64,000 nucleotides of DNA from Octopus sinensis (lineage: Eukaryota): the NCBI RefSeq assembly GCF_006345805.1, contig NC_043009.1, positions 17,546,001-17,610,000 of the forward strand. Direction: 5' to 3'. The position numbers were made by a program, and so were the translations under genes. Positions 4,801-62,410 of this stretch are shown here, one piece after another. A model generated the notes under the pieces. The model made no database searches, was not told the DNA's origin, and worked only from the letters and a program-made list of their open reading frames with translations. Positions within the stretch are counted from its first letter, which is position 1, and every line of letters starts with the position of its first letter.

Positions 4801-5086
4801 CCTCTACCCCCTCCCCCCACATACACAGTGAGTACTCATAGAAACAGAACTAATAGTAAATGTCAGAGTAGTTATGAGAGGAGTTATACAAATAAAAAGT
4901 TTGTTATTATTTAATTTTAAGGTAACAAACGATTTGTTTTTCTTTTGACAATTAGTATTCATTCCTTCGTTTTGAATAAGTACCAAGGAATTTCATAAAA
5001 CTTAACATATGTAAGCCAGAATTCCTGATATTACCCAACGCTGCCGGTCATATGACGAGTAACCCTCTAATAATAACGCTTTCTTA

Positions 5087-5470
5087 TTTTGGCATGAGGC
5101 CAGCAATTCTGATAGCGGGGAAGATTGGTTGACGCCATCGATCCCGGTACTCGACTGGAACTCTATTTTAACAACCCTCAAAGAAAGAAAACAAAGTTGA
5201 TCTCAGTGGAATCAGAATGTAAAGAGCTGGAACAAAATACTGCAAAGTAATCCGCTGCCGCCACCTGCTCTGATCATTCTGTAGCTGTACTGTTTCTAAT
5301 TTAAGGCTAACAATTTTGTAGGGGTCAATACCATCGACCCCAATACTAGACAGATACTTTATTTTATCGCCTCCGAAAGAATGAAAATTAAGCTGACCTC
5401 TCGGGATTTGAACTGGAATAAAAACCACGAGGCATTTTGTCCGACGAGTTAACAATTCTGCCAATCCATT
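5087..5470 (-). mobile_element. Two adjacent decayed SINEs (Deu/Nin-like type), ~5087-5260 and ~5320-5470
   Basis: Reverse complement of the TTTCATCCTTTC..GTCGATAAAATAAGTACC..GGGGTCGATG body seen intact at 25526-25757. Confidence 0.7.
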
Positions 5471-5549
5471 TACCAAGGTTAAGTTTTGTAAAAGAGCAAA
5501 ATTGATTAGTAGAAGAACATGTGAATGGAGACAGAGGTTATAATATGTG

Positions 5550-6666
5550 ACTCGATACGAATGTAAAGCTGTACAACGTGGGAAAAGATCGAACATAAAA
5601 CGAGCTGTCCCCCCTATTACAGCCAAACAGAAAACACATTATTTTAACATGTGACTAAATATGTATTGAAAACAAAGATGCGAAATTATTCTATCGTTTT
5701 GAACACTCAACGTCTATAAACAAAAAAAGCTTCTGAAAGCAGATAAAATAATAAACTATGATAGAACATAATATAAACATGGTGAACATGCCCGAAAAAT
5801 AACGGAGCTAACCAGAAATTGTGGAGTTTAGGCTCCGCTATAAACCGTGATTAATGATTAGATTAATTAATACACGTGTACGTAATTGGTTAGACACTAC
5901 CTTTCGATAATCTGTGCAAAGAATTAGAGACACAACAACAACAAGAATAGTAAGCAAAGAGAATGACAATATTATGTCAAAAAGGTAATGAAGGCATTTA
6001 GTAAGATGTGGGTTAAATTGAGATTGACGGCGACGGCGGCGATTGAGTCGGTGGCTGCTGGAATGGAAATTGATGGAAACACGGGGAAGTAATAGCTGCA
6101 CTGGCACAATAATAAGAGTTGCTTCCCCTTGCATTGTCGCTTGCCTCGCCTTTTCTTCTTTCACGTTCTTAATATGGTTTAATTAGATTTTCATATCCCT
6201 CCTCCTACACGCTCCTCCTTTTCACCATCAACGACATACTTACACACACACACACAAATGTACAAATTTCAGGCACACACACACACACTCCACAAACACA
6301 CAATTCTTCCCCACCTCTCTCATTCATATCTCTTTACGTAACAACACACAACCTTTCCTCCACCACCACCACCACCACCATTGTATCCTAAATCTGTCGA
6401 CCTGCACACACACACACCTATCTTTACCTGGCTGCCTTTCCGCAATGACCCAACTTGAAGAGACAACACACACACACACACACACACACTCCACAAACAC
6501 ACAATTCTTCCCCACCTCTCTCATTCATATCTCTTTACGTAACAACACACAACCTTTCCTCCACCACCACCACCACCACCATTGTATCCTAAATCTGTCG
6601 ACCTGCACACACACACACCTATCTTTACCTGGCTGCCTTTCCGCAATGACCCAACTTGAAGAGACA

Positions 6667-6697
<31 letters not shown>

Positions 6698-7100
6698 CAG
6701 ACGACTAGACATGTCTGCTTCGTGTGTTGTCTACAGCCACTGATATTAATAGAAGTCCGCTTATATCAAGCATAGCTGGTGAAGGTGATCAAGTGGGAGT
6801 TTTGGTTATTTCTTTCATAACTCAGTCAGTAGCTGTACCATTAACGATCGTTGACCTCTCGAAATCTATCAGCAGGCAGCAGGGGTTTGTAATGTTACAA
6901 ATGACAGAGCTCTCGAGAGACGGCGACGCGGGAAGAGGGAAAAGGCAAAGAAAAACAGAGAAAACGTCTATTGACGAAGAGAGAGAGAGAGGAAAGGAAA
7001 GGATGTGAATGGGCAACGATGTGGAGTGTGAAGAGAGGAAAGCGAATCTACGATGTGGGTAAGGTGAAGCGAAAAGAATCAAAACTGGGTCACAAAATAT
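5550..7100. promoter_or_regulatory. CpG-retaining region, candidate promoter / 5' end
   Basis: CpGs are frequent here (e.g. GACGGCGACGGCGGCG at ~6027 and GACGGCGACGCGGG at ~6919) but scarce in 1-5000; mostly non-repeat sequence. Confidence 0.35.
6275..6690. repeat. Near-perfect 201-bp tandem duplication bounded by (CA)n
   Basis: TCCACAAAC at 6289 and 6490; both units appear identical and begin and end in (CA)n tracts. Confidence 0.95.
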
Positions 7101-7149
7101 ATAATATAAACAATGATTGTTTCTGGACGAAATTGTCCTTCATACTCTC

Positions 7150-7530
7150 TTTTTACTCTCTCTCTTTTACTTGTTTCAGTCATTTGACTGCGGCCATGCT
7201 GGGGCACTGCCTTTAGTCGAGCAAATCGACCCCAGCCTAGTACTTATTTCATCGGTGTCTTTTCCCGAACCGTTAAGTTACGAGGACGTAAACACACCAC
7301 CATCGGTTGTCAAGCGATGGTGGTGGTGGTGGTGGTGGTGGAGCAAACACAGACACACAAACATATACACACACATACATACATACATACATACGACGGG
7401 CTTCTTTCAGTTTCCGTCTACCAAATCCACTCACAAGGCTTTGGTCGGGCTTGAGGCTATAGTAGAAGACACTTACCCAAGGTGCCACGCAGTGTAACTG
7501 AACCTGGAACCATGTGGTTGGTAAACAGGC
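7150..7530 (-). mobile_element. tRNA-derived CORE-type SINE (octopus OR-like) with internal microsatellite
   Basis: Reverse complement contains B-box-like GGTTCAGT, CCTTGGGTAAGTGTCTTCTACTATAGCC core, internal (TATG)/(CCA) repeats and the shared tail ..CAGCATGGCCGCAGTCAAATGACTGAAACAAGTAAAAG. Confidence 0.85.
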
Positions 7531-16262: not shown

Positions 16263-17300
16263 ATCATCATCACCATCGTTTAACATCCGTTTTCCATGCT
16301 GGCATGGGTTGGATGGTGTGACTCAAGCCTGGAGAGCCAGTGACTGCACCAGGCTCCAATCAGATACAGCAATATTTCTACAGCTGGATGCCCTTCCTAA
16401 TGCCAACCACTCTGAGTGTAGTGGGTACCTTTTACGTGCCACTGGCACAGGAGCCAGTCAGGCAGGCCTGGCATCGATCATGTTCAGATAGTGCTTTTTA
16501 CATGCCACCGGCATGGGAGTCAGTCAGGGGTTACTGGCATTGGCCACAATCATATAGTGCTTTTTACATGCCACCGGTAGAAGAGCCAGTCAGGCAGTAC
16601 TGGCATCGGCCATGTTTGGATAGTGCTTTTTATGTGCCTCTGGCACAGGAGCCAATCAGACAGACCTGGCATCGACCATGTTTTTTACATGCCACTGGCA
16701 CAGAAGCCAGTCCGGGATCACAGGCATCAACCATGTTCGGATGATGCATTTTACATGCCACTGGAACAGGAACCAGGCAGGAGGCTCTGGCCACAGCTAC
16801 AATTTTGACTTTACTTGACTCAACAGGTCTTCTCAAGCATATCATATTGCCTGATGCATCAAGGGTGCTCTTAAATGGGCCGGACATGCAACACTGGCAT
16901 CGGCCATGGCTGTGATCTCACTTTAGCTGGCTCTTCTCAATCACAGCATATCTCCAAAGGTCGCAGTCTCCTGTCATTGCCTCTGTGAGGCCCAATGTTC
17001 GAAGGTCATGCTTCATCACCTCATCCCATGTCTTCCTGGGTCTCACCTCTTCTACAGGTTCCTTCCACAGTTAGGGTGTGGCACTTCCTCACACAGCTGT
17101 CCTCATCCATACATAACATATGACCACACCAGTGCAGTCATCTCTCTTGCACACCACATTTGATACTTCTTATGTACAACTTTTCCCTCAGGGCACTTAC
17201 ACTCCGTCGTGTGTGCACCCTGACATTACACATGCAGCAGATCATACTAGCATCATTTCTTTCAAGCCTACACATGTCCTCAGCAGTAAAAGGTAATTTG
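16263..17300 (-). mobile_element. 5'-truncated RTE-clade LINE with repeat-expanded 3' UTR
   Basis: Translation across frameshifts gives TAEDMCRLERNDASM..LREKL..RLHWCGHM..DEDSCVRKC..EGTCRRGRPRKTWDEVMKHDLRTLGLTEAM; (GAT)n tail. Confidence 0.9.
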
Positions 17301-28321: not shown

Positions 28322-29574
28322 TTGGGTCATCCCATAAATAATGCAGTTTTTCCAACTGCATGAACTAAAAGTCGGAGGAGGACAGGATAAGCTGTCTGAA
28401 TCAACTTGCTATAAAAGCAGGTCATAATTTTACCTTGCCCTTATTCTTAGTGCAAGTTTTGAAGAGTGCAGTTCGATTTTACCAGTTATTTTTTCAAAGC
28501 TATAATGGAAGTGACAAAGGAGCATATTTGGCATATTTTGCTTTGTGAGTTCAACAAAGACAACAACGCAATGGAAAGTGTGGGAAATATTAATGCAGTA
28601 TATGGGGATCGGACAATAAGCCTAAGCTAGTGTCAACGGTGGTTCCAGAAATTCCGAGCCAGAAACTACAGCCTAGAAGACAAGCCTTGTCCTGGAAGAT
28701 TTGTACAGCTCAATGAGGACGTCCTGCAAACCCTGGTGGAACAAAATCCCATCATAACTGTTGAGGAACTAGCAGAGAAGCTTGGATTTGGTCATTCAAC
28801 CATTCATCGACACCTGTGTGCCATTGGAAAAGTCAGAAAATTGGGTCAATCGGTTCCTCACAAACTTTTCAAGTATAATCGTGTGCAGAGAGTTAATGTG
28901 TGCTCTTCCTTGCTGTCACATGTCATGAATGAACCTTTTTTGGACTGAATAGTGACTGATAACAAGAAATAGAGTCTCCATAGAAAAAGGAGAAACACTG
29001 GCACCCCAGGATAATGAAGGTCTTCATCTACATAAGCTGTTATCTGTTTGGTGGGATACGAAAGGTTTAATCCACTTTGAACTATTAGACTCAAATCAAA
29101 TGATAACAAAGGGGATCTACTGTGAGCAGTTTGAGCAGCTTAAGTCAGTGCTAGAAGAAAAAACAACCATCATTGGTTTCAAGACAAAAGGGGTTCTTCC
29201 ATCAGGATAATGCTGGGCCACATACAACAAGGATGACATTCCAAAGGCTGGAGCAGTCTGAATGGGAAACGATGCCCCACCCACCATATTCACCAGACAT
29301 TACCCCCATCTGATTATGATTTATTCCAGTCTTCAAAATCATTTCAATGAAAAAAATATGAATTCTATAGACAAGGTCAGAATAGTACTAGAGGAGTATT
29401 TTTCGTCACAAACAAGTGAATTTTGGAAGAGGAGCCTTGCAAGTCTGCCACATAGATGGAAGAGAATTGTACAAAATGAAGGAGAATATATTTTAGATTA
29501 AAAAAGAAATTTGTTTATCTTAATTTTGAAAAATAAAAGAAGTATAAAAAAAACACATTTATAGGATGACCCTA
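28322..29574 (+). mobile_element. Full-length non-functional mariner transposon
   Basis: TA then TTGGGTCATCCCATAAAT (5' TIR) and ATTTATAGGATGACCCTA (3' TIR); ~1.25 kb; encloses a transposase pseudogene. Confidence 0.92.
28505..29501 (+). pseudogene. Mariner transposase pseudogene
   Basis: MEVTKEHIWHILLCEF..CQRWFQKFR..STIHRHL..SVPHKL..FLD*IVTD..FHQDNAGPH..HPPYSPDI.PSDYDLF..RWKRIVQNEGEYILD*; stops, frameshifts and a small internal deletion. Confidence 0.92.
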
Positions 29575-32478: not shown

Positions 32479-32729
32479 CAGTGGGGTGCAAAAATGGGTA
32501 TGGAAAAAGTACAACATCAGTGTTTTAATATCTAATACATTCTAATCTTTAGTACGTTCAATTACTTGGCCACATCTTTGAACATCTTAGCGTCATTAAT
32601 CATACCAACACGTTTATCATAAATATAATAATACTTTTATCATAACTTTTAATTTTTGGGATGACAATAAATAAGCATTGTATGTGTTTTCTTTTTTCAT
32701 AACTGTGTGCGTACTTTTGCACTACGCTG
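32479..32729. mobile_element. Tc1/mariner-type MITE in a (TA)n tract
   Basis: TA-CAGTGGGGTGCAAAAAT ... ACTTTTGCACTACGCTG; imperfect TIRs, ~250 bp, no ORF. Confidence 0.65.
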
Positions 32730-32894
32730 TGTGTATACACACACATATATATACATATACACATACATACATATACACATATATATATATACATCTGTAT
32801 ATATATATATACATATATACACATATATATACATATGATTACATATAATTACATACATATACACACATATATACATATAATTACACACACACAC

Positions 32895-32925
<31 letters not shown>

Positions 32926-32946
32926 CACATACATATATATATAGGT

Positions 32947-33346
32947 ATACTCTTTTACTTGTTCAATCATATTATTGCGGCCATGCTGGAGCACCACCTT
33001 TAATCGAGCAACTTGACCCTGGGACTTATTCTTTTGTAAGCCCAGTACTTATTCTATCAGTCTCTTTTGCCGAACCGCTAAGTAACGGGGACACAAACAC
33101 ACCAGCATCCCAGCATCGGTTGTCAAGCAATGCTAGGGGGACAAACACAGACACACAAACGCATATATATATATATATATATACAACGTGCTTCTTTCAG
33201 TTTCCATCTACCAAATCCACTCATAAGGCTTTGGTCGGCCCGAGGTTATAGTAGAAGACACTTGCCCAAGGTGCCACGCAGTGGGACTGAACCTGGAACC
33301 ATGTGGTTGGTAAACAAGCTACTTACCACACAGCCACTCCTGCGCC
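32947..33346 (-). mobile_element. Near-complete CORE-type tRNA SINE
   Basis: Reverse complement: TGGCTGTGTGGTAAG A box, GGTTCAGTCCC B box, CCTTGGGCAAGTGTCTTCTACTATA core, internal (TA)n, conserved tail. Confidence 0.9.
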
Positions 33347-35575: not shown

Positions 35576-35947
<372 letters not shown>

Positions 35948-36951: not shown

Positions 36952-37458
36952 GGATTTAAATTGTACAAAAATGAAATGCATAATTCACATCTAGATACAT
37001 TCAAAATAAAAATACTACTAATGATCAAAATCATCAAATGCAAGAAGATACCCAAACACATTTCTTTGTCATTCAGACATGATTTGATGTTTTTCAACAT
37101 TTTTCTCTCCATAAACACATTTTATGGATTGATAGTGAGGAAGTAGCACACATATTATTTAGCTCAAAGGGGTCAAATGCTGGCAAAAAGAAAAATATTT
37201 TCTAATTTAAATTCTTAACCTCCACCCCACAAGCCTGTATGTGTGTGTGTGTGTGTGTGGTGTGTGTGTGTGTGTGTGTGTGTAAGTAAAAGCATATTTA
37301 CTTACAAAAAAGTATACTATTAAATTATCTTTAATATAACTTTTAAAAATGTGTTTGGGTATCTTCTTGCATTTGATGATTTTGATCATTAGTAGTATTT
37401 TTATTTTGAATGTATCTAGATGTGAATTATGCAGTTCATTTTTGTACAATTTAAATCC
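36952..37458. repeat. 112-bp inverted repeats (36952-37063 / 37347-37458) enclosing the duplicated segment
   Basis: Arms are reverse complements with one mismatch seen (GAAATGC vs GAACTGC); mirrored in ORFs 36961+ and 37449-. Confidence 0.95.
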
Positions 37459-37984
37459 AACAACTAAAATTTAAAGTCACAGATATGAGAAATTCTGTAT
37501 ATACATGTTCAAACTGACAGAACAGGAAATTTGTATAGTATGCATATAATAATTTTATTTTCATTTGACTAAAAAAAAATTCTTTTATGCAGTGCACTAA
37601 CATGGCCACAGACTAATGACTGAAACAGGTAAAAGAGTAAAAGATAAAAAGAAAAGATAAAAGTAGTTAAGAACTATGGAAAAGCCAATGCTAATACCTT
37701 CAAAAGAATAAATGACAAGGCAAACAAATTAATTAACAAACTGGATTTAGCAGAAAAAACTGCAATATTCATACCTAAAACCCTTAAATTTAACTTAAAA
37801 GGCCACAAAGTTAACTTTAACAATAAACCATTCATCAGACTTATCAGCCCTTACTGCATTGGAGCTTTGTAGGGTAAGCAAGGAAATTTACAGACAGAAT
37901 TATTCCTAACATTAAAAAACATTATTACGCTATGTGGAATAATACAAATGAAGTAATGGAATAAGTCAAACATCTCCTTTCTTC

Positions 37985-38187
37985 AGATATATATGTGTGT
38001 GTGTATATAAGTGCATATATATATATATATTTATATATGTATGTATATGTATATATATGTATATGTAAATATATGCATATATATATGTATATACATGTGT
38101 GTGTGTATATATATTTGTGTATATGTATATATATATATATATGTGTGTGTGTATGTATATATATATATATTATATATATATATATAA

Positions 38188-38243
<56 letters not shown>

Positions 38244-38387
38244 CATATATATGTACATATATATGTACATATATATGTACATACATATATATGTACATAT
38301 ATATGTACATATATGTACATATATATATATATGTACATATATATATATGTACATATATATGTACATATATGTACATATATATATATA

Positions 38388-38439
<52 letters not shown>

Positions 38440-38440
38440 T
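37985..38440. repeat. Compound (TA)n microsatellite with palindromic ATATATGTACATATAT units
   Basis: Direct reading of the sequence. Confidence 0.95.
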
Positions 38441-38728
38441 AGGCCATCAGATGTTGCTACACATAGCTGATCACAATGCGCTTCGCATTGTTTTAGCCTT
38501 CAAATGATGCCACCCCGCTGGCTAAGCGAGCAGGCCAACAGAAGAAAGAGTGAGAGAAAGTTGAGGTGAAAGAGTACAGCATGGATCGCCACTACCCCCT
38601 GCCAGAGCCCCGTGGAACTCTGGGTGTTTTTGCTCAATAAACACTCACAATGCCTGGTCTGGGAATTAAAATCTCAATCCTACGACCACGAGTCTGCTGC
38701 TCTAACCACTAGGCCATTGCGCCACCAC
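38440..38728 (-). mobile_element. tRNA-derived SINE (third type)
   Basis: Reverse-complement head GGCGCAATGGCCTAGTGGTTAGAGC; tail GGCATCATTTGAAGGCTAAAACAATGC shared with 53945-54170. Confidence 0.8.
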
Positions 38729-48550: not shown

Positions 48551-48922
48551 CTACCACTTTCAAATCCTTGTCTGTCTGTCTGTCTGTCTGTCTGTGTGTG
48601 TGTCTCTTATATACATGTATGTATGTATGTATACACACACACACATATAGGCACTTCTGTTTAGTAGAAAAGTGAAATGAAAATGTTTGAAAATAATGAG
48701 AAAAACAGTTCAGAGAGAGAAATAAAGACATTGATGAGTTTTTTTTTTAGCACAAGGCCACATGTTTTATTGACTTCTAGAAGGATGATAGTGTTTGGCA
48801 AAATTTGAACTTTGAATGTATTATAAATTGAGAACCACTTTATAAAAAAGCCCACTTGATTCTAGCAAAAACTAAAAATATAAGGGTACCAAATGAAATA
48901 CTTAACCCAATGTTTGTACATT

Positions 48923-49295
48923 CATCATCATCCTCAACAATTAATGCCTGTTTTCCATGCTGGCATGGGTTGGATGACTTGACAGAAACTGGCAAGGCCA
49001 GGTTCCTTAGTCTATTTTGGCTTGTTTTCTATGGCTGGATGCCCTTTCTAACACTAACCACATTACAGAGTATACTGGGTGCTTTTTACATGGCACCAGC
49101 ACCAGTGCTTTTTACGTGGTACTTTGGTTTTAAGATCTCGATTTTGTTGTTGTGGACAGATCTTATTGAGTGCAGCAATGCACCACATATCTTGGTCCTC
49201 TGTCATCTCCTTTGTAAGGTTCATAATTTTGAGATCAGCCTTCAATACTTTGTCCCATGTCTTCCTGGGTCTTTCACAACTTGCCTTCACTTTGT
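48923..49295 (-). mobile_element. Short 5'-truncated RTE LINE
   Basis: VKASCERPRKTWDKVLKADLKIMNLTKEMTEDQDMW; a single 3' UTR module; (GAT)n tail. Confidence 0.85.
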
Positions 49296-51084
49296 ACATT
49301 AGTAGTGATTAAAATAAGGAGTATTTGCAGTGATGATGAGAGGGTATTGGTATGAGTTATACTGGGTTAGTGTATCTGCCTTGAGATATAGCCAGGTAGT
49401 TTGGGTATATTTAGCTGGATAAAATGTGTTGTGGCTCTGGCGAATTCTTGAAAATATTACAATCATTTTTATCATTTGAAATCTTGGAATTATGCAAGTA
49501 TTTCTTTCTTCTACCTCACTGCAGAAATCTTTTCCTTCAGATTTCTTATATCTATGTAAAAACATTCATTTTAACTACTTTTTTTTTATATATTTATTTT
49601 TTACTATTCTGCATTGTAATCCCAATACAAGCATATGCTAAGGCAGCTGTATAGATGGTCAACACCAAAATTTGTCTGAAATTTTTATTCAGTGCAACAA
49701 TTTAATGGTAACAAAGAAAATCTATTTATCTCAGTAATGAAATCAATATTTTATTGTAGTCTGATTTTTCTTTGTGTGTGTGTGTGTGTGTGTGTGTGAG
49801 TGTGGTTTTTTTTTTTTTTTGTTTTTTTACTACGTCTTTATACTTTTTCTCTTTTATAAATATAATTTTTACCTCTCTCCCTCACTCCCTTTTGCCAATG
49901 AATTTAAAAGTGAGACGGAAATAATTCAATATTCAAAGAGGGTAGGAGCTACAATAAAATTTATTGAAATTATTCCCTCGCATCCATTTCAAATCCAAAC
50001 CTTAGTTCCGAATCATTTATCTCAACGTTGTCTATGAAGGTTTGACAGGAATTTAATTAGAGGAAGCTTCAGTCAAAAGAGACAGTTTTTCTTGTTTTTA
50101 TTGATGTCAATGATGCTGTTGTTTATTTGCTTTCCAGTGAGCACTTTACAACAAACTATTATAATACTATCTATATTCATCTGTCAATACTGTCTACCAG
50201 TATACACAGCTTTTACACCAGCTTTCCCACTAATTCATACAATAAAACTAACACTCACATTTGAAAATACTTAATACTTATGCTTTCTTTTTTCATCATT
50301 TTTTTTTTCATTATTTGTGCTTACATTATTACTGTTCATTGTTTCTATGTTTTCTTTTGGCTATTTTGAAATCTTTTTCCTTTCCATTTTTAATGTGTTG
50401 GATGGTTCTTTAACTATTGTGATAAATTTAAAATAGCAGCTATTTTTACAGCTGAACTAGTAGCCAACCTCACAGCTAGACTAAATCAAGACCAATAATA
50501 TGCCTAACATAAAGTGCACAACACAGCAGCTCTATAATGCCCTTCTCAACATTTACTGGGAGACTAGTCACGCATATTATTACTCATAGATTTCATGAGA
50601 ACAGAAACAGTTTGTTAAATGAGCAAGAATCTTCTTCAGTGTTTGCCTTTCTAAAACTTATTTTCATACATAAGTATATAGTCAATGTAGTCTCTGTGGT
50701 ATACATGAAGCCTTAGTATTACAGAACTGGATAAGTGAAGCTCTATGATGTTCATGTATTTTTCAGATCATTAGCAACATAAACTGTAGTTATACCACTG
50801 GGAGTCTAACTTGAATTTGCCAAGAATTCACTGCTTTGCATTAACTCTTTCTTCCATAACAATCATGATTGTTAACACAGGCATAAGGCTTCATAGAATT
50901 TAGAAAGTGGAAATAAGATTGGGAAACACTGAAGAAAGACAAAGTTATTTTTATTGGATTTTAATTCAGAGTACAGAGAGACTAAACGAAATACTGCATG
51001 GCTTTGACGTAGGCATTTCATTTTGAGCAATAGCGTTTGTCAGTGGTTACACATTTCTAACAGGTCAATCACTCGTTCACAGCA

Positions 51085-51470: not shown

Positions 51471-51764
51471 ATACTATTATAATATATTATTAAATATTAT
51501 ATCATTGCTATTATGTTAAACTGTTGTATGTCCAAATGTGTCCAAATGCATTTATTTCAATTTTTATTTTTGCTTGCAATAGCTAGTTTTTTGGGTCAAA
51601 CTCTCATATCTGCAGCTGCTTCAGATGCCAAGATATCAAAAATTGTCAAAGTGTAGTACAACAGTTTTGCTATGGAATGGTAAAACTATTTTTTTGTTTT
51701 CTGAAAAAGCAACATTTTGGACTTATGACACTTTTGCATTATAGCAACACTATATTTTTCTTTT

Positions 51765-53915
51765 ATTCTTTTACTTGTTTCAGCCACTTGAATGCAGCCA
51801 TGCTGGAGCACTGCTTTGAAGGGATTTTAGTTGAACAAGTCAACCTCAGGACTTATTTTTTAAAACCTAGTACTTATTCTATTGATCTCTTTTGCCAAAC
51901 TGTCAAGTTACGGGGATATAAACACACCAACATCAGTTGTCAAACAGTGATGGGGGGGGGGAAGCAAATACAAACACAAACACAATAGATGTATACATCT
52001 ATTGTATATATATATGCTTGGCTTAGATTTCCCTTGGCGGGCTGGCCATATCGGAGCAATCTCAAGATTAATCAGCCGAAATTGCTAAGATGATCTGGTT
52101 CTTGACTGATGACTGAGGGCTTCGAATGTCCCGTCCTGTGGTTCTTGTGTCGTCTCTGTGGTGTTTCATGTTCTTGTCCATGTCTGTAATTAATTTTACT
52201 GTTTACCTATATAATCGGCGGCTACGTATCCACAATTGTCCTTATACGATAAGTATATTTTTTTCTCAAGCTTTGATACGACTCTTAATCTGTCTCTTTT
52301 TCTCTCTCTCTCTCTCCTCCCTTATTCCACTCCTTTCTTTCCCTCTCCATCCGTCCCCCCCCCCTTTCTACGTTTCTCTATCTCTCTCACCTCCAGCCCC
52401 CTCGATCTGTCTCTTTCTCTCCTCCCTCGTCACCTTCTCTCCCTTTTCATCTGTCCCTTCTCCTGTCTTTTGTTCTCACGTGACAGCTAGCCGCTGTTGA
52501 GCGCTCTTTTCGTTTTCAGCAGCCTCAGAAGCAACACGTTTTGTTCGTCTCCCCGTGGCCTTTAGGCACAACTTCACAAGCCAGCCCCTACTCAAATCGT
52601 CCTGTCGAAAGACCCTTGTCCTACGTCCTGGTTTTGTTTTGTTGTTTATTTTTTATTTTTACCGTTATTGTCTTTACGTTTTGTATTCTTATTGGTGTCA
52701 CGTATTCTGTATTTTTGTTTGTGTACTTCGATCGTTTTCCGTCCTTTCGTTGTATACATTCGAAGCTTTCTTCCAGGGGATCTAATGCGCTTGGCTTAGA
52801 TTTCCCTTGGCGGGCTGGCCATATCGGAGCAATCTCAAGATTAATCAGCCGAAATTGCTAAGATGATCTGGTTCTTGACTGATGACTGAGGGCTTCGAAT
52901 GTCCCGTCCTGTGGTTCTTGTGTCGTCTCTGTGGTGTTTCATGTTCTTGTCCATGTCTGTAATTAATTTTACTGTTTACCTATATAATCGGCGGCTACGT
53001 ATCCACAATGTCCTTATACGATAAGTATATTTTTTTCTCAAGCTTTGATACGACTCTTAATCTGTCTCTTTTTCTCTCTCTCTCTCTCCTCCCTTATTCC
53101 ACTCCTTTCTTTCCCTCTCCATCGTCCCCCCCCCCCTTCTACGTTTCTCTATCTCTCTCACCTCCAGCCCCCTCGATCTGTCTCTTTCTTCTCCTCCTCG
53201 TCCACCTTCTCTCCCTTTTCATCTGTCCCTTTCTCCTGTCTTTTGTTCTCACGTGACAGCTAGCCGCTGTTGAGCGCTCTTTTCGTTTTCAGCAGCCTCA
53301 GAAGCAACACGTTTTGTTCGTCTCCCCGTGGCCTTTAGGCACAACTTCACAAGCCAGCCCCTACTCAATCGTCCTGTCGAAAGACCCTTGTCCTACGTCC
53401 TGGTTTTGTTTTGTTGTTTATTTTTTATTTTTACCGTTATTGTCTTTACGTTTTGTATTCTTATTGGTGTCACGTATTCTGTATTTTTGTTTGTGTACTT
53501 CGATCGTTTTCCGTCCTTTCGTTGTATACATTCGAAGCTTTCTTCCAGGGGATCTAATGCGCTTGGCTTAGATTTCCTTGGCGGGCTGGCCATATCGGAG
53601 CAATCTCAAGATTAATCAGCCGAAATTGCTAAGATGATCTGGTTCTTGACTGATGACTGAGGGCTTCGAATGTCCCGTCCTGTGGTTCTTGTGTCGTCTC
53701 TGTGGTGTTTCATGTTCTTGTCCATGTCTGTAATTAATTTTACTGTTTACCTATATATATATATATATATATATATGACAGGCTTCTTTCAGCTTCTGTC
53801 TAGCAAATACATTCACAAGGCTTTGGTCAGCTCAAGGTTATAGTAGGAAGACACTTGGCCAAGGTGCCATGCAGTGGGACTGAACCCAAAGCTTCTTACA
53901 ACACAACCACACCTG
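51765..53915 (-). mobile_element. CORE-type SINE interrupted in its (TA)n by the 52016-53757 insertion
   Basis: Tail at 51765-52015; core and head at 53758-53915. Confidence 0.85.
52016..53757. mobile_element. Young tandem element R(198)-U(~575)-R-U-R, period 773/772 bp; possibly derived from a Penelope-like terminal repeat
   Basis: GCTTGGCTTAGATTTC at 52016, 52789 and 53561; units differ essentially only by small indels; CpG-rich with a CT-rich tract; no credible ORF. Confidence 0.85.
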
Positions 53916-53944
53916 CATCTATATATTATATTATTATTATACAG

Positions 53945-54170
53945 TGAAGGTGCATGGCCTAGTGGTTAGGCTGTTTCACTCACAATTGTTAGATTGTGGG
54001 TTCGATTCCCAAACCGGGAAGTACATTGTATTCTTGAGCAAAACACTTCATTTTACGCTGCTCCAGTCCCCCTTTTGATCAGTGGAGATGTGGGCCTGCT
54101 CCCCTAGCCAGCCAAGTGGCATCATTTGAAGGCAAAAACAATGCAAAAGCATTATGGCCAGCAATGATAG
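53945..54170 (+). mobile_element. tRNA-derived SINE with CORE-like body
   Basis: TGGCCTAGTGG A box, GGTTCGATTCC B box, CTTGAGCAAAACACTT core. Confidence 0.8.
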
Positions 54171-54204
54171 GCTGGTCAGTCACATGATTTTTATTATTGT
54201 TGTT

Positions 54205-54415
54205 AAGGCAGCACGCTGGCAGAATCGTTAGCATGCCAGGTAAAATGCTTAGCAGCATTTCATCCATCTTTATGTTCTGAGTTCAAATTCCACCGAGGTC
54301 GATTTTGCCTTTCATCCTTTCAGGGTTGATAAATTAAGTACCAGTGAAACATTAGGGTCGATGTAATCGACTCATCCCCTTCCACCAAATGGCTGCCCTA
54401 GTGGCAAAATTTGAA
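54205..54415 (+). mobile_element. Deu/Nin-like SINE
   Basis: Same sequence family as 25526-25757. Confidence 0.88.
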
Positions 54416-55995: not shown

Positions 55996-56942
55996 TGTCA
56001 TCCTTTGTACCTATCATATTTCCATATTAATGCAGTCATCTCTCTTGTACACTACATCTGATTCCTCTTACACTCAATCTTACTCTCAGCTTGTTTCTGC
56101 TCCTTCACTCACACACAAACTGCTGCTGCTGCTACTACCACCTTTATTTACTATTATATAGTTTTATTTTAGCTGTCTCTTTTCATCTGTTTGTAATCCG
56201 AGATAATAAAAATGACTAACTTTTCAAATAAAAACAATGTTTTTTTTTTTTATTTCTTCTTGCACTACACAAAATAATATATTCAGCAATAATGTGGAGG
56301 GGGAAAAAAAAGCATAACAAAAATCAACCAACTAAAAATTGTGCTAGTAGTCATCTGAAACTTGTGTATAACATTAAAATGATTATTTGTTCTTTCATTC
56401 AATGAATTATAGAATCGGCTGTTGCTAAGTAGGAGGAGAAGGGGAGAGAGGGTAAGGCCAAAACAAACACCTGCTTTTTGAAGTTTTAATGGTTAAGGTT
56501 TTTTTTTTCCATTTGTTGTTCTTGTTGTTGAACCAGTGGAAAATAGAAAATACGTATTGCTACCGTTGTATTTCCTTGCATGATTTTATGTAATTTTGTT
56601 ACTAATTTTGAAAGTAATTTTATTTTTCATTCATATTTTAGAAATTTTACTCCAAATATGTTCTGATTAATTAAATAAATTATAAAGAGTGTAACAGATT
56701 CTTAATAAGAGTTAAGTATCAGGAGTGGGGATGGGCGCTGCACTTTTTTTCCTGTCTACTTCTCGGCAGTATTTGTAAACTTTCATTTATTCTTATTTAT
56801 TTATTTTCATTTAATTTTGCTATAGAATAGACCAGATACATGCATACATACATACATATATATATACATACATACATATATATATATATATTATATACAT
56901 ACATACATATATATACATACATACATACATACACATACATAC

Positions 56943-56985
<43 letters not shown>

Positions 56986-57042
56986 AAACACACTTATAGG
57001 TGTATAATGCTTGAAATTAAAATTCAGTACATGTCATGGAGA

Positions 57043-57295
57043 TTATATATTTGTATAAACAGCTTGACACAGATCTGCATTACAAACAGTTTCACAGATA
57101 CAAAAAGCAGGTCTGATTATTTGATTATTATAATATATTAACACATCCAAATGATCAGGTGTGCTTGCTGCATTTGTGAAACTGCCTTTGGGAAACCATC
57201 CGAAAGAGTCTTCTGTTGCAATGGAATCGTGACATGCACCAAGTTGATTGTTTACAAAGAAGTTGTTCTTACAGACCTTTAGCAAAGCTTCGGTT
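57043..57295 (-). CDS. Candidate terminal exon, product unknown
   Basis: GTTTGTCTTTTTCATAAAG| acceptor and an 84-codon open frame TEALLKVCKNNFFVNNQLGACHDS..FGWFPKGSFTN..*. Confidence 0.15.
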
Positions 57296-57519
57296 CTTTA
57301 TGAAAAAGACAAACAGTTTCACAGATGCAAAAAGTATGTCTCACAATTTGAATGCTACAATACTATATTCTATCATCACATGATCAAACCAGATACTTGC
57401 AGCTGAGGTGTTACACCATCAACAGAGAAAAATTGGTTAAGTTCAAAGAATAACAGATTATTGGTTGCTGAATGGCAAGAAAATGCTCAGTGGGAGCATG
57501 AAGGTAGGGTTATAATTTA

Positions 57520-57875
57520 AGAACATGGAAGGTGAATGAAGCATAATGTCACCATTCCTAGTGATCACTCCAAACACGATGGTGTTGACTGGACTTTTAT
57601 CATTCTCAGTACATGTCCTCAGATTGCACTGTTCTCACATTGACACCGAAACACTCTGAAATGTTCGTATTGGATCTTCCAGTGTGAATGCCAAGCAGTA
57701 CAGCATGTCATTTCCAAATTTCTGGCACAGTGAATTGCATCATGGTGCTGTTTTTACTCACAGATGGTGCCCAACTGACCCTACTATAGTATGCAGTTGA
57801 CAAAATCAAGAACAAACAATGTGCAAGCATGAAATAAAAAATATAAAATGGTAACAATTTATCCATCGCACCCTG
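57520..57875 (-). mobile_element. Internally deleted Tc1/mariner-superfamily element
   Basis: End CAGGGTGCGATGGATAAATTG; MMQFTVPEIWK*HAVLLGIHTGRSN.. joined to PVNTIVFGVITRNGDIM. Confidence 0.65.
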
Positions 57876-57996
57876 CGTGCATGTGTATATATACATATAC
57901 ACACACTTACATACACGCATTCTTTTATTCCTTCATACATTTCAGCCATATATACGCACACACACACACACACATATATACATATGTATATATATA

Positions 57997-58027
<31 letters not shown>

Positions 58028-58063
58028 CATATATATATGTGTGTGTGTGTGTGTGTGTTTATT

Positions 58064-58094
<31 letters not shown>

Positions 58095-58103
58095 GTATGT
58101 ATA

Positions 58104-58275
58104 TCATCATCATCGTTTAGCGTCCGCTTTCCATGCTAGCATGGGTTGGACAGTTCAACTGGGGTCTGAGAAGCCAGAAGGCTGCACCAGGCCCAGTCTG
58201 ATCTGGCAATGCTTCTACGGCTGGATGCCCTTCCTAACGCCAACCACTCCATGAGTGTAGTGGGTGCTTTTTACG
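58104..58275 (-). mobile_element. RTE-type 3' tail element
   Basis: (CAT)n-CGTTTAGCGTCCGCTTTCCATGC..GGCTGGATGCCCTTCCTAACGCC. Confidence 0.88.
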
Positions 58276-58308
58276 TGCCACCGGCATAGATGCCAGTGTG
58301 TGTGTGTA

Positions 58309-58388
<80 letters not shown>

Positions 58389-58404
58389 GTGTGCATGTGT
58401 GTGT

Positions 58405-58466
<62 letters not shown>

Positions 58467-58554
58467 GTATATATATATATATATATATGTGTGCATGTGT
58501 GTGTGTGTATATATATATATATATGTATGTATGTGCATATATATAATTATTTTT

Positions 58555-58935
58555 CACCTGATTCAGTCATTTTGACTGTGGCCTTGCTGGGCATCACCTT
58601 GAAGAGTTTTTTAATTCAATAAATTGACCCAAGGACTTATTTTTAAATATAGCATTGGTTTCTTTTGCCGAATCACTAAGTTACAGGGATTTAAACACAC
58701 TAACACTGGTTGTCAAACAGTCGTGTGGGACAATCACACACATACACACACACAACGGGCTTCTTTCAGTTTCCTCCTATTAAAGCCACTCACAAGGATA
58801 CTATAGCCTTGGGCTGACTTTACTTGCCCCGAGGCTATAGTAGAAGGCACTTACCCAAATTGCCACGTAGTGGGACTGAACCCAGAACCATGTAGTTGGG
58901 AAGCAAGCTTCTTACAACACACCCACACCTGTACT
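58555..58935 (-). mobile_element. CORE-type SINE
   Basis: Same family as 32947-33346. Confidence 0.85.
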
Positions 58936-59488
58936 TATGTATATATATGAAACTAACAAAGATCTCTAGTTCCTGTAGGCCTGGCAAAGTTGATCATTCT
59001 CCTAAAAACACCTGGGAAAAAAGTGAACTGAACTGATTGGTGCATTTCAGCTAGGAGTGTGATGCAGAACCACGTACAGTGTATGAAGCAACAACTCCAT
59101 GTCTATTTCTGTGGTGTTCTATTCACATGATCATTCACATTTACCTCACCTCTCTGTGTCTGTCTGCCTGTCTATCTGTCTCTCTTCCCATGATCCCACC
59201 CTGCAAAAAGAAATAATCTGTCCAGAAGGAAACATACAACCAATATACTGCCATCCCGTCAAAGGATTATTTGAAAACATATTTATTTCTCACGTTAAAC
59301 TTTTACTTCTATTGAAATATAAGGCCAGACCTGGGTAAAAAGTAAAGAACTAAAGTATACGAATTAAGAATTGAATAATAAAGTAGTGTTATTTGTATCT
59401 TCAACTCAGCCCATCAGGAATGTAAACTTTTTTTTAATAACTAAGCCAATATTTTTAAAAAAAAGGTTGTTGTTGGTATTGCTGCTAA

Positions 59489-59529
<41 letters not shown>

Positions 59530-59777
59530 GGGCTAACGAAAAACCAAAAAAAAATGCTGCACAACAGTGGTGGTTTGATTGTAAAGATTTCCTAAGATGA
59601 GGATATCTTAGTTGTGATATGGACAAATGCCAGACACACAGGTTGTTTATGTGTGTGTGTGTGTGTGAGAGAGAGGCGGGAGAGAGAAAAGGGCAGACAC
59701 ACACTGCTTGTAAAGATTGTAAAGATGTGAGATGGAGACAAGTCAACTGAAGTTTGCTGATAGGAAGTTGAAAAAAA

Positions 59778-60241
59778 AGGGTTCCAAGGAAAAGATTTTA
59801 TATATATATATATACATATATGTGTATATATATACATATACATGTATACATATACATATATATGTATACATATACATATATATGTATATATACACACATG
59901 TATATATATATATACACATATATATGTATATATACACATATATATGTATATATACACACATGTATATATATATATAAACACATACATATGTATATATACA
60001 CATATATATGTATATATACACACATGTATATATATATATAAACACATACATATATATATATACATGTATATGTGTATATATATATACATATATGTATATA
60101 TATACATATATGTATATATATACATATAAATGTATATATACACACATATATATATGTATATATACACATATATATATATACATTATATATATATACATAT
60201 ATATGTATATATATATAAAGTATATATATATATACATATAT
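59778..60241. repeat. Compound (TA)/(CA)/(TG) microsatellite
   Basis: Direct reading of the sequence. Confidence 0.95.
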
Positions 60242-60535
60242 ATCATCATCATCATCATTTAACGTCCGTTTTCAATGCAAGCATGGGTTTGACGGTTTGA
60301 CCGGGGTATGGTAAGCCATGGAGGCTGCACCAGGCTCCAGTCTGATTTGGCAGTGTTTCTACGGCTGGATGCCCTTCCTAATGCCAACCACTCCGTGAGT
60401 GTAGTGGGTGCTTTTTACATGCCACCGGCACAGGGGCCAGAGCAGGCTGGTAAACGGCCACGATCGGTTGGTGCTTTTACGTGTCACCAACATGGATGCC
60501 AGTAAGGCACCGCTAGTATCTGCCACATTCGGATG
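60242..60535 (-). mobile_element. RTE-type 3' tail element with two UTR modules
   Basis: (CAT)n tail and conserved GGCTGGATGCCCTTCC block, then two GTGCTTTT..TGCCAC-type modules. Confidence 0.88.
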
Positions 60536-60549
60536 GAGCTTTTTACGTA

Positions 60550-60554
60550 CACAG

Positions 60555-60601
<47 letters not shown>

Positions 60602-61669
60602 CATACACACATATACATATATATATACATACATACATATATATATGTATATATATACATACACACATATACATATATATATACATACATACATATATAT
60701 ATATACATACATACTATATATATATATATCATACATACATATATAATATACATACACACATATACATATATATTTATAATACATACATATATATATAATA
60801 CATACCTACATATACATATATACATACCTACATACATATATATATATACATACATACATATATATCATACATACATACATATATATATATATACATACAT
60901 ACATATATATATACATACATACATATATATATATACATACATATATATATATACATACATACATACATATATATATATATACATACATACATATATATAT
61001 ATACATACATACATATATATATATACATACATACATATATATATATACATACATACATATATATATACATACATACAATATATATATACATACATACATA
61101 TATATATATACATACATACATATATATATACATACATACATATATATATACATACATACATACATACATATTATATATATACATACATACATATATATTA
61201 TACATACATATATAGACAATACATACATACATATATATATATATACATACATACATATATATATATATACTACATACATATATATATATACATACATACA
61301 TATATATATATAATATATCCATAACATATATCATATATATACATACATACTATTATATACTATATTATACATTAATACATTACATACATAATATATACAT
61401 ACATACATATTATATATACATACATTACATACTATATATAACATACATATATACCTATACTATTATTAACATATCATCTATATAATATACATACTACTAT
61501 ATATATACTTACATACTACATAGATATATATACTACTATACATATATATTATACATACATACCAGTATTATATACATACATACATATATATATATAATAA
61601 CATACATATATACATATTATAGATATACATACATACATATATATAATACATACATACAATATATATATA

Positions 61670-61702
<33 letters not shown>

Positions 61703-62293
61703 TATATACATACATACATATATATATACATACATACATATATATATACATACATACATATATATATATATATACATATATACATATATATATATACATA
61801 CATATATAATACAATACATACATATATATATATACATACATACATATATATACTATACATACATACATATATATATATACATACATACATACAATATATA
61901 CATACATACATATAATATTATATACTATATACATATAATATATATACATACATACATATATATATATACATACAAAGATATATATATATATACATATATA
62001 CATAATATATATATATTATATACATACACACATATAATATATATATATACATACACACATAATATATATATATACACACATATATATATATATATACATA
62101 CACTATATATAATACATACACATATATATACATATATATATATACATATACATACATATATATATACATATACATACATATACATATGTACATATATATA
62201 TATGTTTATATACATATACACACACACACATATATATATACATATACATACATATACATATGTACATATATATATATATGTTTATATACATAT

Positions 62294-62334
<41 letters not shown>

Positions 62335-62410
62335 CACACACATATATGTATATATACATATATGTATATATACATATACACACACTTATATCATCATCAT
62401 CATATATATA
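60550..62410. repeat. ~1.9-kb (TACA)/(TA) microsatellite array
   Basis: Direct reading; degenerate between ~61300 and ~61700. Confidence 0.95.

What the first reader, a model, noticed from the sequence alone, without database searches (positions are those of the whole stretch)
52016..53757. Very young R-U-R-U-R tandem element inserted in a SINE's (TA)n
Seen: a 198-bp R three times and a ~575-bp U twice (period 773/772), almost no substitutions, high CpG, a CT-rich tract, T-rich strand bias, no ORF, no TSD or TG..CA ends; it interrupts a SINE exactly in its (TA)n. Known: n+1/n arrays arise from Penelope pseudo-LTRs, retrozymes copied from circular RNA, and tandem TRIMs. Inference: a non-autonomous retroelement copied more than twice around a circular or re-primed template. 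It may be an undescribed retrozyme-like family.
Basis: partly seen in the sequence, partly recalled or inferred. Interest (0 to 1): 0.75.

Follow-up and report, generated by a model that had tools for sequence, protein, structure and literature searches.

The report
Young tandem insert in SINE (TA)n
A very recent 1.74-kb non-coding insertion made of 2.26 head-to-tail copies of a 773-bp unit sits in the TA-repeat of an old SINE; it looks most like a non-autonomous Penelope-type retroelement rather than a ribozyme-bearing "retrozyme", but whether it belongs to a dispersed family could not be tested here.

Summary
Window 52016-53757 is R(198)-U(575)-R-U-R with periods 773/772. It splits an old SINE exactly in its internal (TA)n, and the two flanks rejoin colinearly with other SINE copies. 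The copies show no true substitution; all 9 differences are changes in homopolymer length, typical of long-read error. CpG o/e is 0.92 against 0.32 for the window, and the + strand is 68% pyrimidine.

The retrozyme reading fails its defining tests. Rfam finds no hammerhead or other ribozyme at E<=10, there is no CUGANGA...GAAA core, and no strand folds significantly (z -0.5, -1.9; R alone +1.2, -0.03). LTR/TRIM hallmarks (TG..CA, PBS, PPT), Helitron termini and TIRs are also absent. "No TSD" is undecidable inside (TA)n.

"R" may simply be the partial leading copy of a 2.26-unit array, which is the pseudo-LTR layout of Penelope-like elements. Those elements are known to target (TA)n or AT-rich DNA, to lack hammerheads in some clades, and to have non-autonomous head-to-tail derivatives.

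No other copy could be found in the window, in 5.8 billion predicted proteins or in any DNA collection I could reach. Family status, autonomous partner and unit number therefore remain untested. Best call: new member of a known kind, at moderate confidence.

The parts
52016..52213 (+). R copy 1 (198 bp). This is the leading partial unit of the array. Its left junction with the SINE (TA)n, tatatatat|GCTTGGC, shows no microhomology.
52214..52788 (+). U copy 1 (575 bp). It starts ATCGGCGG right after R's TATATA and ends ...CTAATGC. It holds a CT-rich tract (~52290-52475), a CpG-rich middle part and a T-rich 3' part.
52789..52986 (+). R copy 2, identical to R copy 1.
52987..53560 (+). U copy 2 (574 bp). 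It differs from U copy 1 only by homopolymer-length changes.
53561..53757 (+). R copy 3 (197 bp, one C fewer in a C-run). Its last 6 bp, TATATA (53752-53757), merge with the target (TA)n, giving microhomology at the right junction.
52106..52112 (+). CTGATGA box in R, repeated in each R. It looks like a hammerhead core but has no helix II and is followed by GAAU, so it is not a ribozyme.
51765..52015 (-). Left half of the interrupted old SINE (SINE sense is on the minus strand). It ends in an 11-bp (TA) tract, 52005-52015.
53758..53905 (-). Right half of the interrupted SINE (the tRNA-like head, read on the minus strand). It starts with a 19-bp (TA) tract, 53758-53776.

Best explanation
The insert is a very recent insertion of a non-coding, non-autonomous retroelement laid down by target-primed reverse transcription at a nick in the SINE's (TA)n. 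It is organised as a Penelope-like partial tandem.

On this reading the true unit is the 773-bp U+R. The array is one 5'-truncated unit (the 198 bp called R, i.e. a pseudo-LTR) followed by two complete units.

Inferred mechanism (not shown): a reverse transcriptase/endonuclease supplied in trans nicks the TA repeat. The likely source is a Penelope-like element; less likely, a microsatellite-targeting restriction-like-endonuclease LINE of the Dong/R4 type. It starts cDNA synthesis at a fixed site at the unit's 3' end. It then copies either a multi-unit read-through transcript from a tandem donor locus or several RNA molecules in succession by end-to-end template jumps. It stops part-way through the third unit.

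If the + strand is the sense strand, the unit ends in UAUAUA, which can pair with the TA target. If the - strand is the sense strand, the TATATA is the microhomology used to join the truncated 5' end. The sequence alone cannot decide which.

What is shown: the anatomy, the youth, the target, the lack of coding capacity, and the absence of ribozyme, LTR, Helitron and TIR hallmarks. What is inferred: RNA mediation, the identity of the partner, and the existence of a family.
For: Anatomy and target:
- 2.26 head-to-tail units that directly abut (TA)n on both sides, with no unique terminal sequence.
- A true insertion into a SINE's internal (TA)n, with colinear flanks.
- Asymmetric junctions: 6-bp TATATA microhomology at one end and none at the other.

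Youth and non-coding nature:
- Zero substitutions between copies and CpG o/e of 0.92 in a 0.32 background.
- No homologue of any of the six frames in 5.8 billion protein clusters and no Pfam family.

Exclusions:
- No TIRs, TG..CA, PBS, PPT or Helitron termini.
- No ribozyme.

Literature:
- PLE insertions are typically partial tandems forming pLTRs. Naiad PLEs prefer (TA)n, lack hammerheads and hide their TSDs in microsatellites. [quoted passage not shown]
- A purified PLE protein nicks AT-rich DNA and starts reverse transcription at a fixed internal site on a multi-copy transcript (PMC11167929).
- Octopus vulgaris has 31 recently active Penelope-like families and abundant recently active Dong-R4 LINEs (PMC13282606). 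This applies only if the host is an octopod, which rests on my recognition of the SINE and was not verified by any tool.
Against: - No second copy was found anywhere: not in the window (blastn, nhmmer) and not in the viral, metagenome, prokaryote-genome, plasmid or phage collections. These collections hold essentially no animal genomes, so this is absence of a test, not evidence of absence. A family is still not demonstrated.
- There is no sequence link to any RT/GIY-YIG element, and the window holds no such ORF.
- Canonical PLE clades carry a hammerhead in the pLTR, and this element has none.
- The hammerhead-less, (TA)n-targeting Naiad clade is reported as ancient remnants only in cephalopods (PMC8557442).
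- The optional PLE signatures are absent: no 30-40-bp tail and no adjacent inverted truncated copy.
- Nothing in the sequence proves an RNA intermediate; there is no poly(A) and no intron loss.
- A second perfect tandem duplication at a microsatellite (201 bp x2, 6274-6675) shows that such arrays arise here without any transposon mechanism.
Confidence: 0.4

Rival explanations
1. A DNA-level event with no mobile family. A piece of DNA was captured during repair of a break in the fragile (TA)n, and/or was amplified on the spot by unequal exchange or replication slippage between its own repeats. The source could be a fragment of a 773-bp tandem repeat or satellite, an extrachromosomal circle, or a single-copy segment.
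For: - One junction uses 6-bp microhomology and the other none, as in end-joining.
- No other copy was found.
- The same window holds another 100%-identical tandem duplication bracketed by a microsatellite, (CA)n-X-(CA)n-X-(CA)n at 6274-6675. Perfect local duplications at microsatellites therefore occur in this genome or assembly.
- Any 2.26-copy array gives the R-U-R-U-R picture.
Against: - The insert's composition is foreign to its surroundings (CpG o/e 0.92 vs 0.32; 68% pyrimidine), so it came from elsewhere as a block.
- A 1.7-kb insertion confined to a (TA)n tract with no collateral loss of SINE sequence is more typical of transposition than of break repair.
- Recently active transposons are plentiful in octopus genomes (PMC13282606).
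Confidence: 0.25
2. A small LTR-type non-autonomous element (TRIM-like), with R as the LTR and U as the internal region. Its LTR-internal-LTR form became LTR-I-LTR-I-LTR by unequal recombination between LTRs or by template switching.
For: - The array starts exactly at the first base of R and ends at the last base of R.
- R is 198 bp, within the TRIM LTR range (range from my own knowledge).
- A TA-type TSD could be hidden in the (TA)n, and the 'TT' phase break fits an odd-length (e.g. 5-bp) duplication.
- The minus strand has long purine tracts.
Against: - R does not begin with TG or end with CA on either strand.
- No TGG-initiated tRNA-complementary site lies next to R on either strand. The only nearby TGG is 14 nt away and is not tRNA-like.
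- No purine tract abuts R; the nearest is about 45 nt away.
- There is a known precedent of a pLTR element misread as an LTR element (MRC1).
Confidence: 0.1
3. One reading: a retrozyme-like element whose ~773-nt circular RNA was reverse-transcribed more than twice around (rolling-circle cDNA) and then integrated.
For: - A non-integer number of head-to-tail units with near-zero divergence.
- Non-coding.
- Animal retrozymes are tandem and are linked to Penelope-like elements (preprint 10.64898/2026.07.22.740005).
Against: - No hammerhead or any other Rfam ribozyme at E<=10 on either strand, and no CUGANGA...GAAA core.
- Folding is no better than shuffled sequence for the unit (z -0.53 and -1.87) or for R.
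- 68% pyrimidines cap pairing well below a viroid-like rod.
- By definition a retrozyme has a hammerhead in each unit.
- A circle formed some other way, such as back-splicing or ligation, is not excluded, but nothing supports it.
Confidence: 0.07
4. A rolling-circle DNA transposon (Helitron or Helentron type) that read through its terminator and inserted as a tandem multimer at an AT site without a TSD.
For: - Insertion in (TA)n with no visible TSD and a head-to-tail multimer.
- Helitrons are recently active in O. vulgaris (PMC13282606).
Against: - On neither strand does the insert start with TC or end with CTRR. The ends are GCTTGG.../...CCTATATA on the + strand and TATATAGG.../...CCAAGC on the - strand.
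- The flanks rejoin as T|T, not A|T.
- There are no subterminal inverted repeats.
- The unit number is not an integer.
Confidence: 0.03
5. The unit count, though not the insertion itself, is an assembly artefact: the true allele has fewer or more units.
For: All differences between copies are homopolymer-length errors, which shows an imperfectly polished long-read assembly. Near-identical tandem repeats are a classic place for copy-number errors.
Against: The 1.74-kb array is far shorter than typical long reads, so a single read should span it. The junctions are clean on both sides.
Confidence: 0.1

Closest known systems
Non-autonomous Penelope-like elements with pseudo-LTRs, e.g. MRC1 of Chlamydomonas (a non-autonomous Chlamys PLE), and the Naiad/Chlamys clade in general (PMC8557442, PMC9940879)
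   Same: Non-coding. Partial-tandem or multicopy head-to-tail insertion that mimics LTRs. Insertion into a microsatellite ((TA)n for Naiads), so that TSDs cannot be seen. No hammerhead ribozyme. Very low divergence, indicating recent activity.
   Different: No sequence link to any autonomous PLE could be tested. MRC1 is algal and targets other repeats. Naiads are reported as long-dead remnants in cephalopods. There is no 30-40-bp 'tail' and no inverted truncated copy here.
Animal (non-LTR) retrozymes (Cervera & de la Pena 2020, cited from memory; preprint 10.64898/2026.07.22.740005)
   Same: Non-coding tandem units. Thought to be PLE-dependent non-autonomous retroelements.
   Different: Retrozymes carry a type I hammerhead in every unit and give compact circular RNAs. 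This unit has no ribozyme and no significant fold. At 773 bp it is also larger than the few-hundred-nt units I recall for that class.
TRIM / tandem LTR-internal-LTR-internal-LTR arrays of small LTR retrotransposons
   Same: An n+1 / n arrangement of a ~200-bp repeat and a ~575-bp internal part. Non-coding.
   Different: No TG..CA ends, no PBS, no PPT. A TSD is not demonstrable.
Microsatellite-targeting restriction-like-endonuclease non-LTR retrotransposons (R4/Dong, NeSL/Togen, some HERO; PMC4640811) and elements they could mobilise
   Same: Insertion inside a simple repeat. On the + strand the unit ends in the target motif (TATATA), like the repeat tails of such elements. Dong-R4 is recently active in octopus (PMC13282606).
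   Different: Head-to-tail multimers are not their usual product. No shared 3' end could be tested. The (TAA)n preference of Dong is from my memory, not from a tool.

Membership tests
Retrozyme (animal, non-LTR type) | A type I hammerhead ribozyme in every tandem unit | tested here: not met
   Rfam cmscan of 51500-54300, both strands, E<=10: only chance miRNA-like hits in the (TA)n. No CTGANGA...GAAA core on either strand. The one CTGATGA box has 0 bp of helix II and is followed by GAAU.
Retrozyme (animal, non-LTR type) | Non-coding head-to-tail tandem units | tested here: met
   2.26 units of 773 bp. No protein homologue in any frame and no Pfam family.
Retrozyme (animal, non-LTR type) | Compact, highly self-paired RNA | tested here: not met
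   Unit MFE z-scores are -0.53 (+) and -1.87 (-). R alone gives +1.24 and -0.03. The strand is 68% pyrimidine.
Retrozyme (animal, non-LTR type) | Expression as circular RNA | not testable with these tools
   No transcriptome data are available here.
Penelope-like element, non-autonomous derivative | Partial tandem (5'-truncated copy ahead of full copies) forming a pseudo-LTR; multicopy head-to-tail insertions | tested here: met
   The array is a 198-bp partial unit plus two full 773-bp units. Definition taken from PMC8557442.
Penelope-like element, non-autonomous derivative | Insertion into AT-rich DNA or a (TA)n microsatellite, with the TSD obscured | tested here: met
   The break lies inside the SINE's (TA)n. 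The target preference is documented in PMC8557442 and PMC11167929.
Penelope-like element, non-autonomous derivative | Sequence similarity of the 3' end or pLTR to an autonomous RT + GIY-YIG element of the same genome | not testable with these tools
   No animal genome or repeat library can be searched here. The window has no RT or endonuclease ORF. The paper supplements hold no consensus library.
Penelope-like element, non-autonomous derivative | Across copies: a constant 3' end and variable 5' truncation | not testable with these tools
   Only one locus is available. No other copy was found in the window or in any collection.
Penelope-like element, non-autonomous derivative | Hammerhead in the pLTR (canonical clades only), 30-40-bp tail, adjacent inverted truncated copy (all optional) | tested here: not met
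   No hammerhead. No inverted repeat involving the array and no extra terminal segment. These features are absent in, or optional for, Naiad/Chlamys-type PLEs.
LTR retrotransposon / TRIM (incl. LTR-type retrozyme) | LTRs bounded by TG...CA | tested here: not met
   R reads GCTTGG...CCTATATA on the + strand and TATATAGG...GCCAAGC on the - strand.
LTR retrotransposon / TRIM (incl. LTR-type retrozyme) | A tRNA-complementary primer-binding site next to the 5' LTR and a polypurine tract abutting the 3' LTR | tested here: not met
   The + strand continues ATCGGCGGCTACG. The - strand continues GCATTAGATCCCCTGGAAG, with its TGG 14 nt away and no tRNA-like spacing. The nearest purine run of at least 10 nt is about 45 nt from R.
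LTR retrotransposon / TRIM (incl. LTR-type retrozyme) | 4-6-bp target-site duplication | tested here: inconclusive
   Both flanks are (TA)n. Rejoining gives a TT phase break and a tract about 11 bp longer than in a sister SINE. This is compatible with an odd-length TA duplication but does not prove one.
Helitron / Helentron | 5'-TC and 3'-CTRR termini with a subterminal hairpin, insertion between A and T (T and T with terminal inverted repeats for Helentrons) | tested here: not met
   The termini do not match on either strand. No terminal inverted repeat (best score 7 of 60). The unit number is not an integer.
Satellite / local tandem duplication | Other, longer arrays of the same monomer, or a single-copy source locus elsewhere in the genome | not testable with these tools
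   None in the 64-kb window. The rest of the genome is not available.

The most novel reading that the evidence does not exclude
This is one copy of a currently active, ribozyme-free, (TA)n-targeting non-autonomous retroelement family in a cephalopod. It multiplies as head-to-tail multimers, by template jumping or from a circular template made without a hammerhead. It would be driven either by a Naiad-type Penelope-like element thought to be extinct in cephalopods or by an undescribed partner.
Probability: 0.12. Interest if true: 0.6.

Novelty: new member of a known kind. Interest (0 to 1): 0.3.

Why it matters
If the element belongs to a family, it would mark ongoing Penelope-type (or microsatellite-targeted) retrotransposition in this genome. 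It would also be an animal counterpart of the algal MRC1: a non-coding passenger without a ribozyme.

That bears on an open question: whether hammerheads are needed for PLE-dependent mobilisation or merely ride along.

It is also a practical warning for annotation. The n+1/n layout mimics an LTR element or a retrozyme but has the defining features of neither.

If it is a single-locus duplication, it is ordinary.

Tried and rejected
Searches for other copies (all empty):
- Exact-product look-ups of five ORFs in or beside the element.
- Protein search with the U-to-R junction ORF.
- Protein search with a 1200-aa query covering all six frames of the unit.
- Protein search with the left-flank frame, hoping for the orthologous locus or the host.
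- Exact-word DNA scans with an R word and a U word in the viral, metagenome and prokaryote-genome collections.
- blastn against plasmids and phages.
- blastn and nhmmer within the window.
None of these collections holds the host genome, so the results say nothing about copy number.

Supplements of the two most relevant papers held no repeat libraries.

Structural and coding tests (all negative):
- Rfam at gathering threshold on the whole window and at E<=10 on the region: nothing relevant.
- ARAGORN: no tRNA-like part.
- The bacterial-type promoter/terminator scan is uninformative for a eukaryote.
- Pfam on the unit's ORFs: nothing.

Rejected readings:
- Retrozyme: no ribozyme and no fold.
- TRIM/LTR: no TG..CA, PBS or PPT.
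- Helitron: wrong termini.
- TIR transposon: no inverted ends.
- Tyrosine-recombinase integration of a circle: that would give an integer number of units starting at the crossover site.
- Mitochondrial or bacterial/vector origin: wrong composition, and no plasmid or phage match.

Host identity (octopod cephalopod) rests only on my recognition of the SINE. I could not confirm it with a tool.
Full report
**1. What is there.**
Reading 51500-54300, the repeat finder and a blastn of the first unit against the whole window agree on the layout. A 198-bp segment R occurs three times: 52016-52213, 52789-52986 and 53561-53757. A 575-bp segment U occurs twice: 52214-52788 and 52987-53560. Start-to-start spacing is 773 and 772 bp.

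The identity is far beyond chance: 98.97% over 776 columns between units, and 99.5% for the third R.

A base-by-base comparison shows that every one of the 9 differences is a change in the length of a homopolymer run. The single apparent T-to-C change lies on the border between a C-run and a T-run. There is therefore no clean substitution in about 970 compared positions. The differences look like residual long-read sequencing error, so the copies may be identical.

**2. Composition.**

| Measure | Unit | Window |
|---|---|---|
| GC | 44.6% | 35.3% |
| CpG o/e | 0.92 (1.04 without the CT tract) | 0.32 |
| Purines on + strand | 31.7% | mean 50.7% |

The CpG value is in the top 1.5% of 773-bp windows, and the purine fraction is lower than in every other 773-bp window. 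In a CpG-depleted neighbourhood this means the block arrived recently and from elsewhere.

**3. The insertion site.**
The two flanks (51760-52015 and 53758-53920), joined in a script, align across the junction to two other copies of the same SINE at 7163-7504 and 32948-33293. A multiple alignment puts the break inside the SINE's own internal (TA)n/(YA)n tract, with no SINE bases missing.

The junctions:
- Left: ...tatatatat|GCTTGGC, with no homology.
- Internal U|R: ...ctaatgc|GCTTGGC.
- Internal R|U: CCTATATA|atcggcgg.
- Right: CCTATATA|tatatata..., so the last 6 bp of R are shared with the target.

Two corrections follow.
- 'No TSD' cannot be decided in a TA repeat. Rejoining the flanks gives a T|T phase break and a TA tract of about 30 bp, against about 19 bp in a sister SINE. 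That would fit an odd-length TA duplication, an odd-length deletion or one extra base.
- R-U-R-U-R is what any 2.26-copy tandem array looks like. With a single locus there is no independent evidence that R is a module of its own.

**4. Tests of the retrozyme or circular-RNA idea.**
- Rfam on both strands at E<=10 returns only chance miRNA-like matches in the TA repeats. It returns no hammerhead, HDV-like, twister, pistol, hatchet or hairpin ribozyme. The whole window has no match at gathering scores.
- An explicit search for CUGANGA...GAAA on a circularised unit finds nothing on either strand. The one CTGATGA box (52106-52112) is followed by a segment with no base-paired stem and by GAAU.
- The unit folds no better than shuffled sequence (z = -0.53 on the + strand, -1.87 on the - strand). 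R alone does no better (z = +1.24 and -0.03).
- A strand with 68% pyrimidines cannot form a viroid-like rod.

By the definition used in the field, a retrozyme carries a hammerhead in each unit (preprint 10.64898/2026.07.22.740005). That defining feature is not met.

**5. Tests of other known architectures .**
- LTR/TRIM: R does not start with TG or end with CA on either strand. No tRNA-complementary site follows R. No purine tract abuts R.
- Helitron/Helentron: the ends are neither TC nor CTRR, the flanks rejoin as T|T, there are no terminal inverted repeats and the unit number is not an integer.
- TIR transposon: the best inverted match of the ends scores 7 of 60.
- Tyrosine-recombinase integration of a circle would give whole units starting at the crossover site, which is not what is seen.
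- ARAGORN finds no tRNA-like part.
- The element is non-coding. A 1200-aa query covering all six frames of the unit finds nothing among 5.8 billion protein clusters, nor does the junction ORF. The open stretches match no Pfam family.

**6. What it most resembles.**
The literature describes this exact combination for Penelope-like elements.
- Their insertions are 5'-truncated and organised as partial tandems, so a truncated copy ahead of a full copy forms a pseudo-LTR.
- Naiad-type PLEs prefer (TA)n, lack hammerheads and hide their TSDs in the microsatellite.
[quoted passage not shown] - Biochemistry on a purified PLE protein shows nicking of AT-rich DNA and initiation of reverse transcription at a fixed internal site of a transcript that spans several tandem copies (PMC11167929).

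Read this way, the unit is U+R, the leading R is simply the truncated third unit, and the 6-bp TATATA has one of two roles. It is either the 3' end that pairs with the target (if the + strand is sense) or the microhomology used to join the truncated 5' end (if the - strand is sense). I cannot tell which.

A microsatellite-targeting restriction-like-endonuclease LINE is a possible alternative driver. Such clades, including R4, are mostly target-specific (PMC4640811), and Dong-R4 is the most abundant recently active LINE group in Octopus vulgaris (PMC13282606).

**7. Weak points.**
- Everything about a 'family' is untested. No other copy exists in the window. The collections I could search hold no animal genome. 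These were the viral, metagenome and prokaryote contigs, plasmids and phages, and gene-product indexes.
- The window contains no RT or endonuclease ORF.
- Canonical PLEs carry hammerheads. The clade that lacks them is said to survive only as ancient remnants in cephalopods (PMC8557442).
- The cephalopod (octopod) origin of the window is my recognition of the SINE, not a tool result.
- The same window holds another perfect tandem duplication bracketed by a microsatellite (201 bp x2 at 6274-6675 in (CA)n). A purely DNA-level origin is therefore a serious rival: capture at a break in the fragile TA repeat, and/or unequal exchange.
- The homopolymer errors show that the assembly is not perfectly polished, so the unit number should be checked in reads.

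**8. Verdict.**
- Plausible but not shown: a non-autonomous retroelement laid down as more than two units.
- Failed on defining features: retrozyme-like or circular-RNA origin.

My estimates:

| Reading | Probability |
|---|---|
| Non-autonomous target-primed (PLE-like) element | about 0.4 |
| DNA-level capture or duplication | about 0.25 |
| LTR/TRIM type | about 0.1 |
| Circular-RNA template | about 0.07 |
| Rolling-circle DNA transposon | about 0.03 |

Separately, I put about 0.1 on the unit count being mis-assembled. This is most likely a new member of a known kind, of modest interest until a genome-wide search shows whether a family and a partner exist.

Noticed in passing
window 6274-6675: A 201-bp unit repeated twice at 100% identity. 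Each copy ends in (CA)n and the first is preceded by (CA)n, giving (CA)n-X-(CA)n-X-(CA)n. This is a second perfect tandem duplication at a microsatellite in the same 64 kb. I used it as a control for the DNA-level rival explanation.
   Followed up: partly
window 52016-53757 (differences at 52031, 52236, 52351, 52365, 52418-52431, 52458, 52594 and their partners): All differences between the repeat copies are homopolymer-length changes. This suggests the assembly comes from imperfectly polished long reads, so indel-level detail anywhere in this window should be treated with caution.
   Followed up: yes
window 35576-35947 and 37062-37350, with 36985-37060 / 37351-37420: A ~370-bp segment containing a long (GT)n is present twice, 1.49 kb apart, at ~96% identity. 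The second copy sits between ~70-bp inverted repeats, which resembles a foldback or MITE-like element carrying the segment.
   Followed up: partly
window 28631-28945 (+): An open stretch of 105 aa with a helix-turn-helix match (Pfam HTH_32, E = 2.4e-5, 25.3 bits, below the curated cut-off of 33.7). It looks to me like the N-terminal DNA-binding part of a mariner-type transposase remnant. The transposase reading is from memory and was not tested.
   Followed up: partly
window ~4800-7500: A second CpG-rich block (CpG o/e 0.7-1.2 in a 0.3 background). It spans several repeats and one of the better-preserved SINE copies (7163-7504). It could be younger insertions or an unmethylated island.
   Followed up: no
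window 32600-33000, 37900-38500, 56800-62400: Very long degenerate (TA)n/(CA)n/(TATG)n-type microsatellite fields of hundreds to thousands of bases. Translated, they give the long 'YIYIYI' pseudo-ORFs. (TA)n targets are therefore abundant in this region.
   Followed up: no
window 16425-16799: A tandem repeat of ~66 bp (about 5-6 copies at 72-77% identity) inside a 134-aa open frame with a repeated peptide motif. A similar 'WMPFL' motif recurs in the open frames at 48832-49299 and 57847-58251, so it is probably another interspersed repeat family.
   Followed up: no
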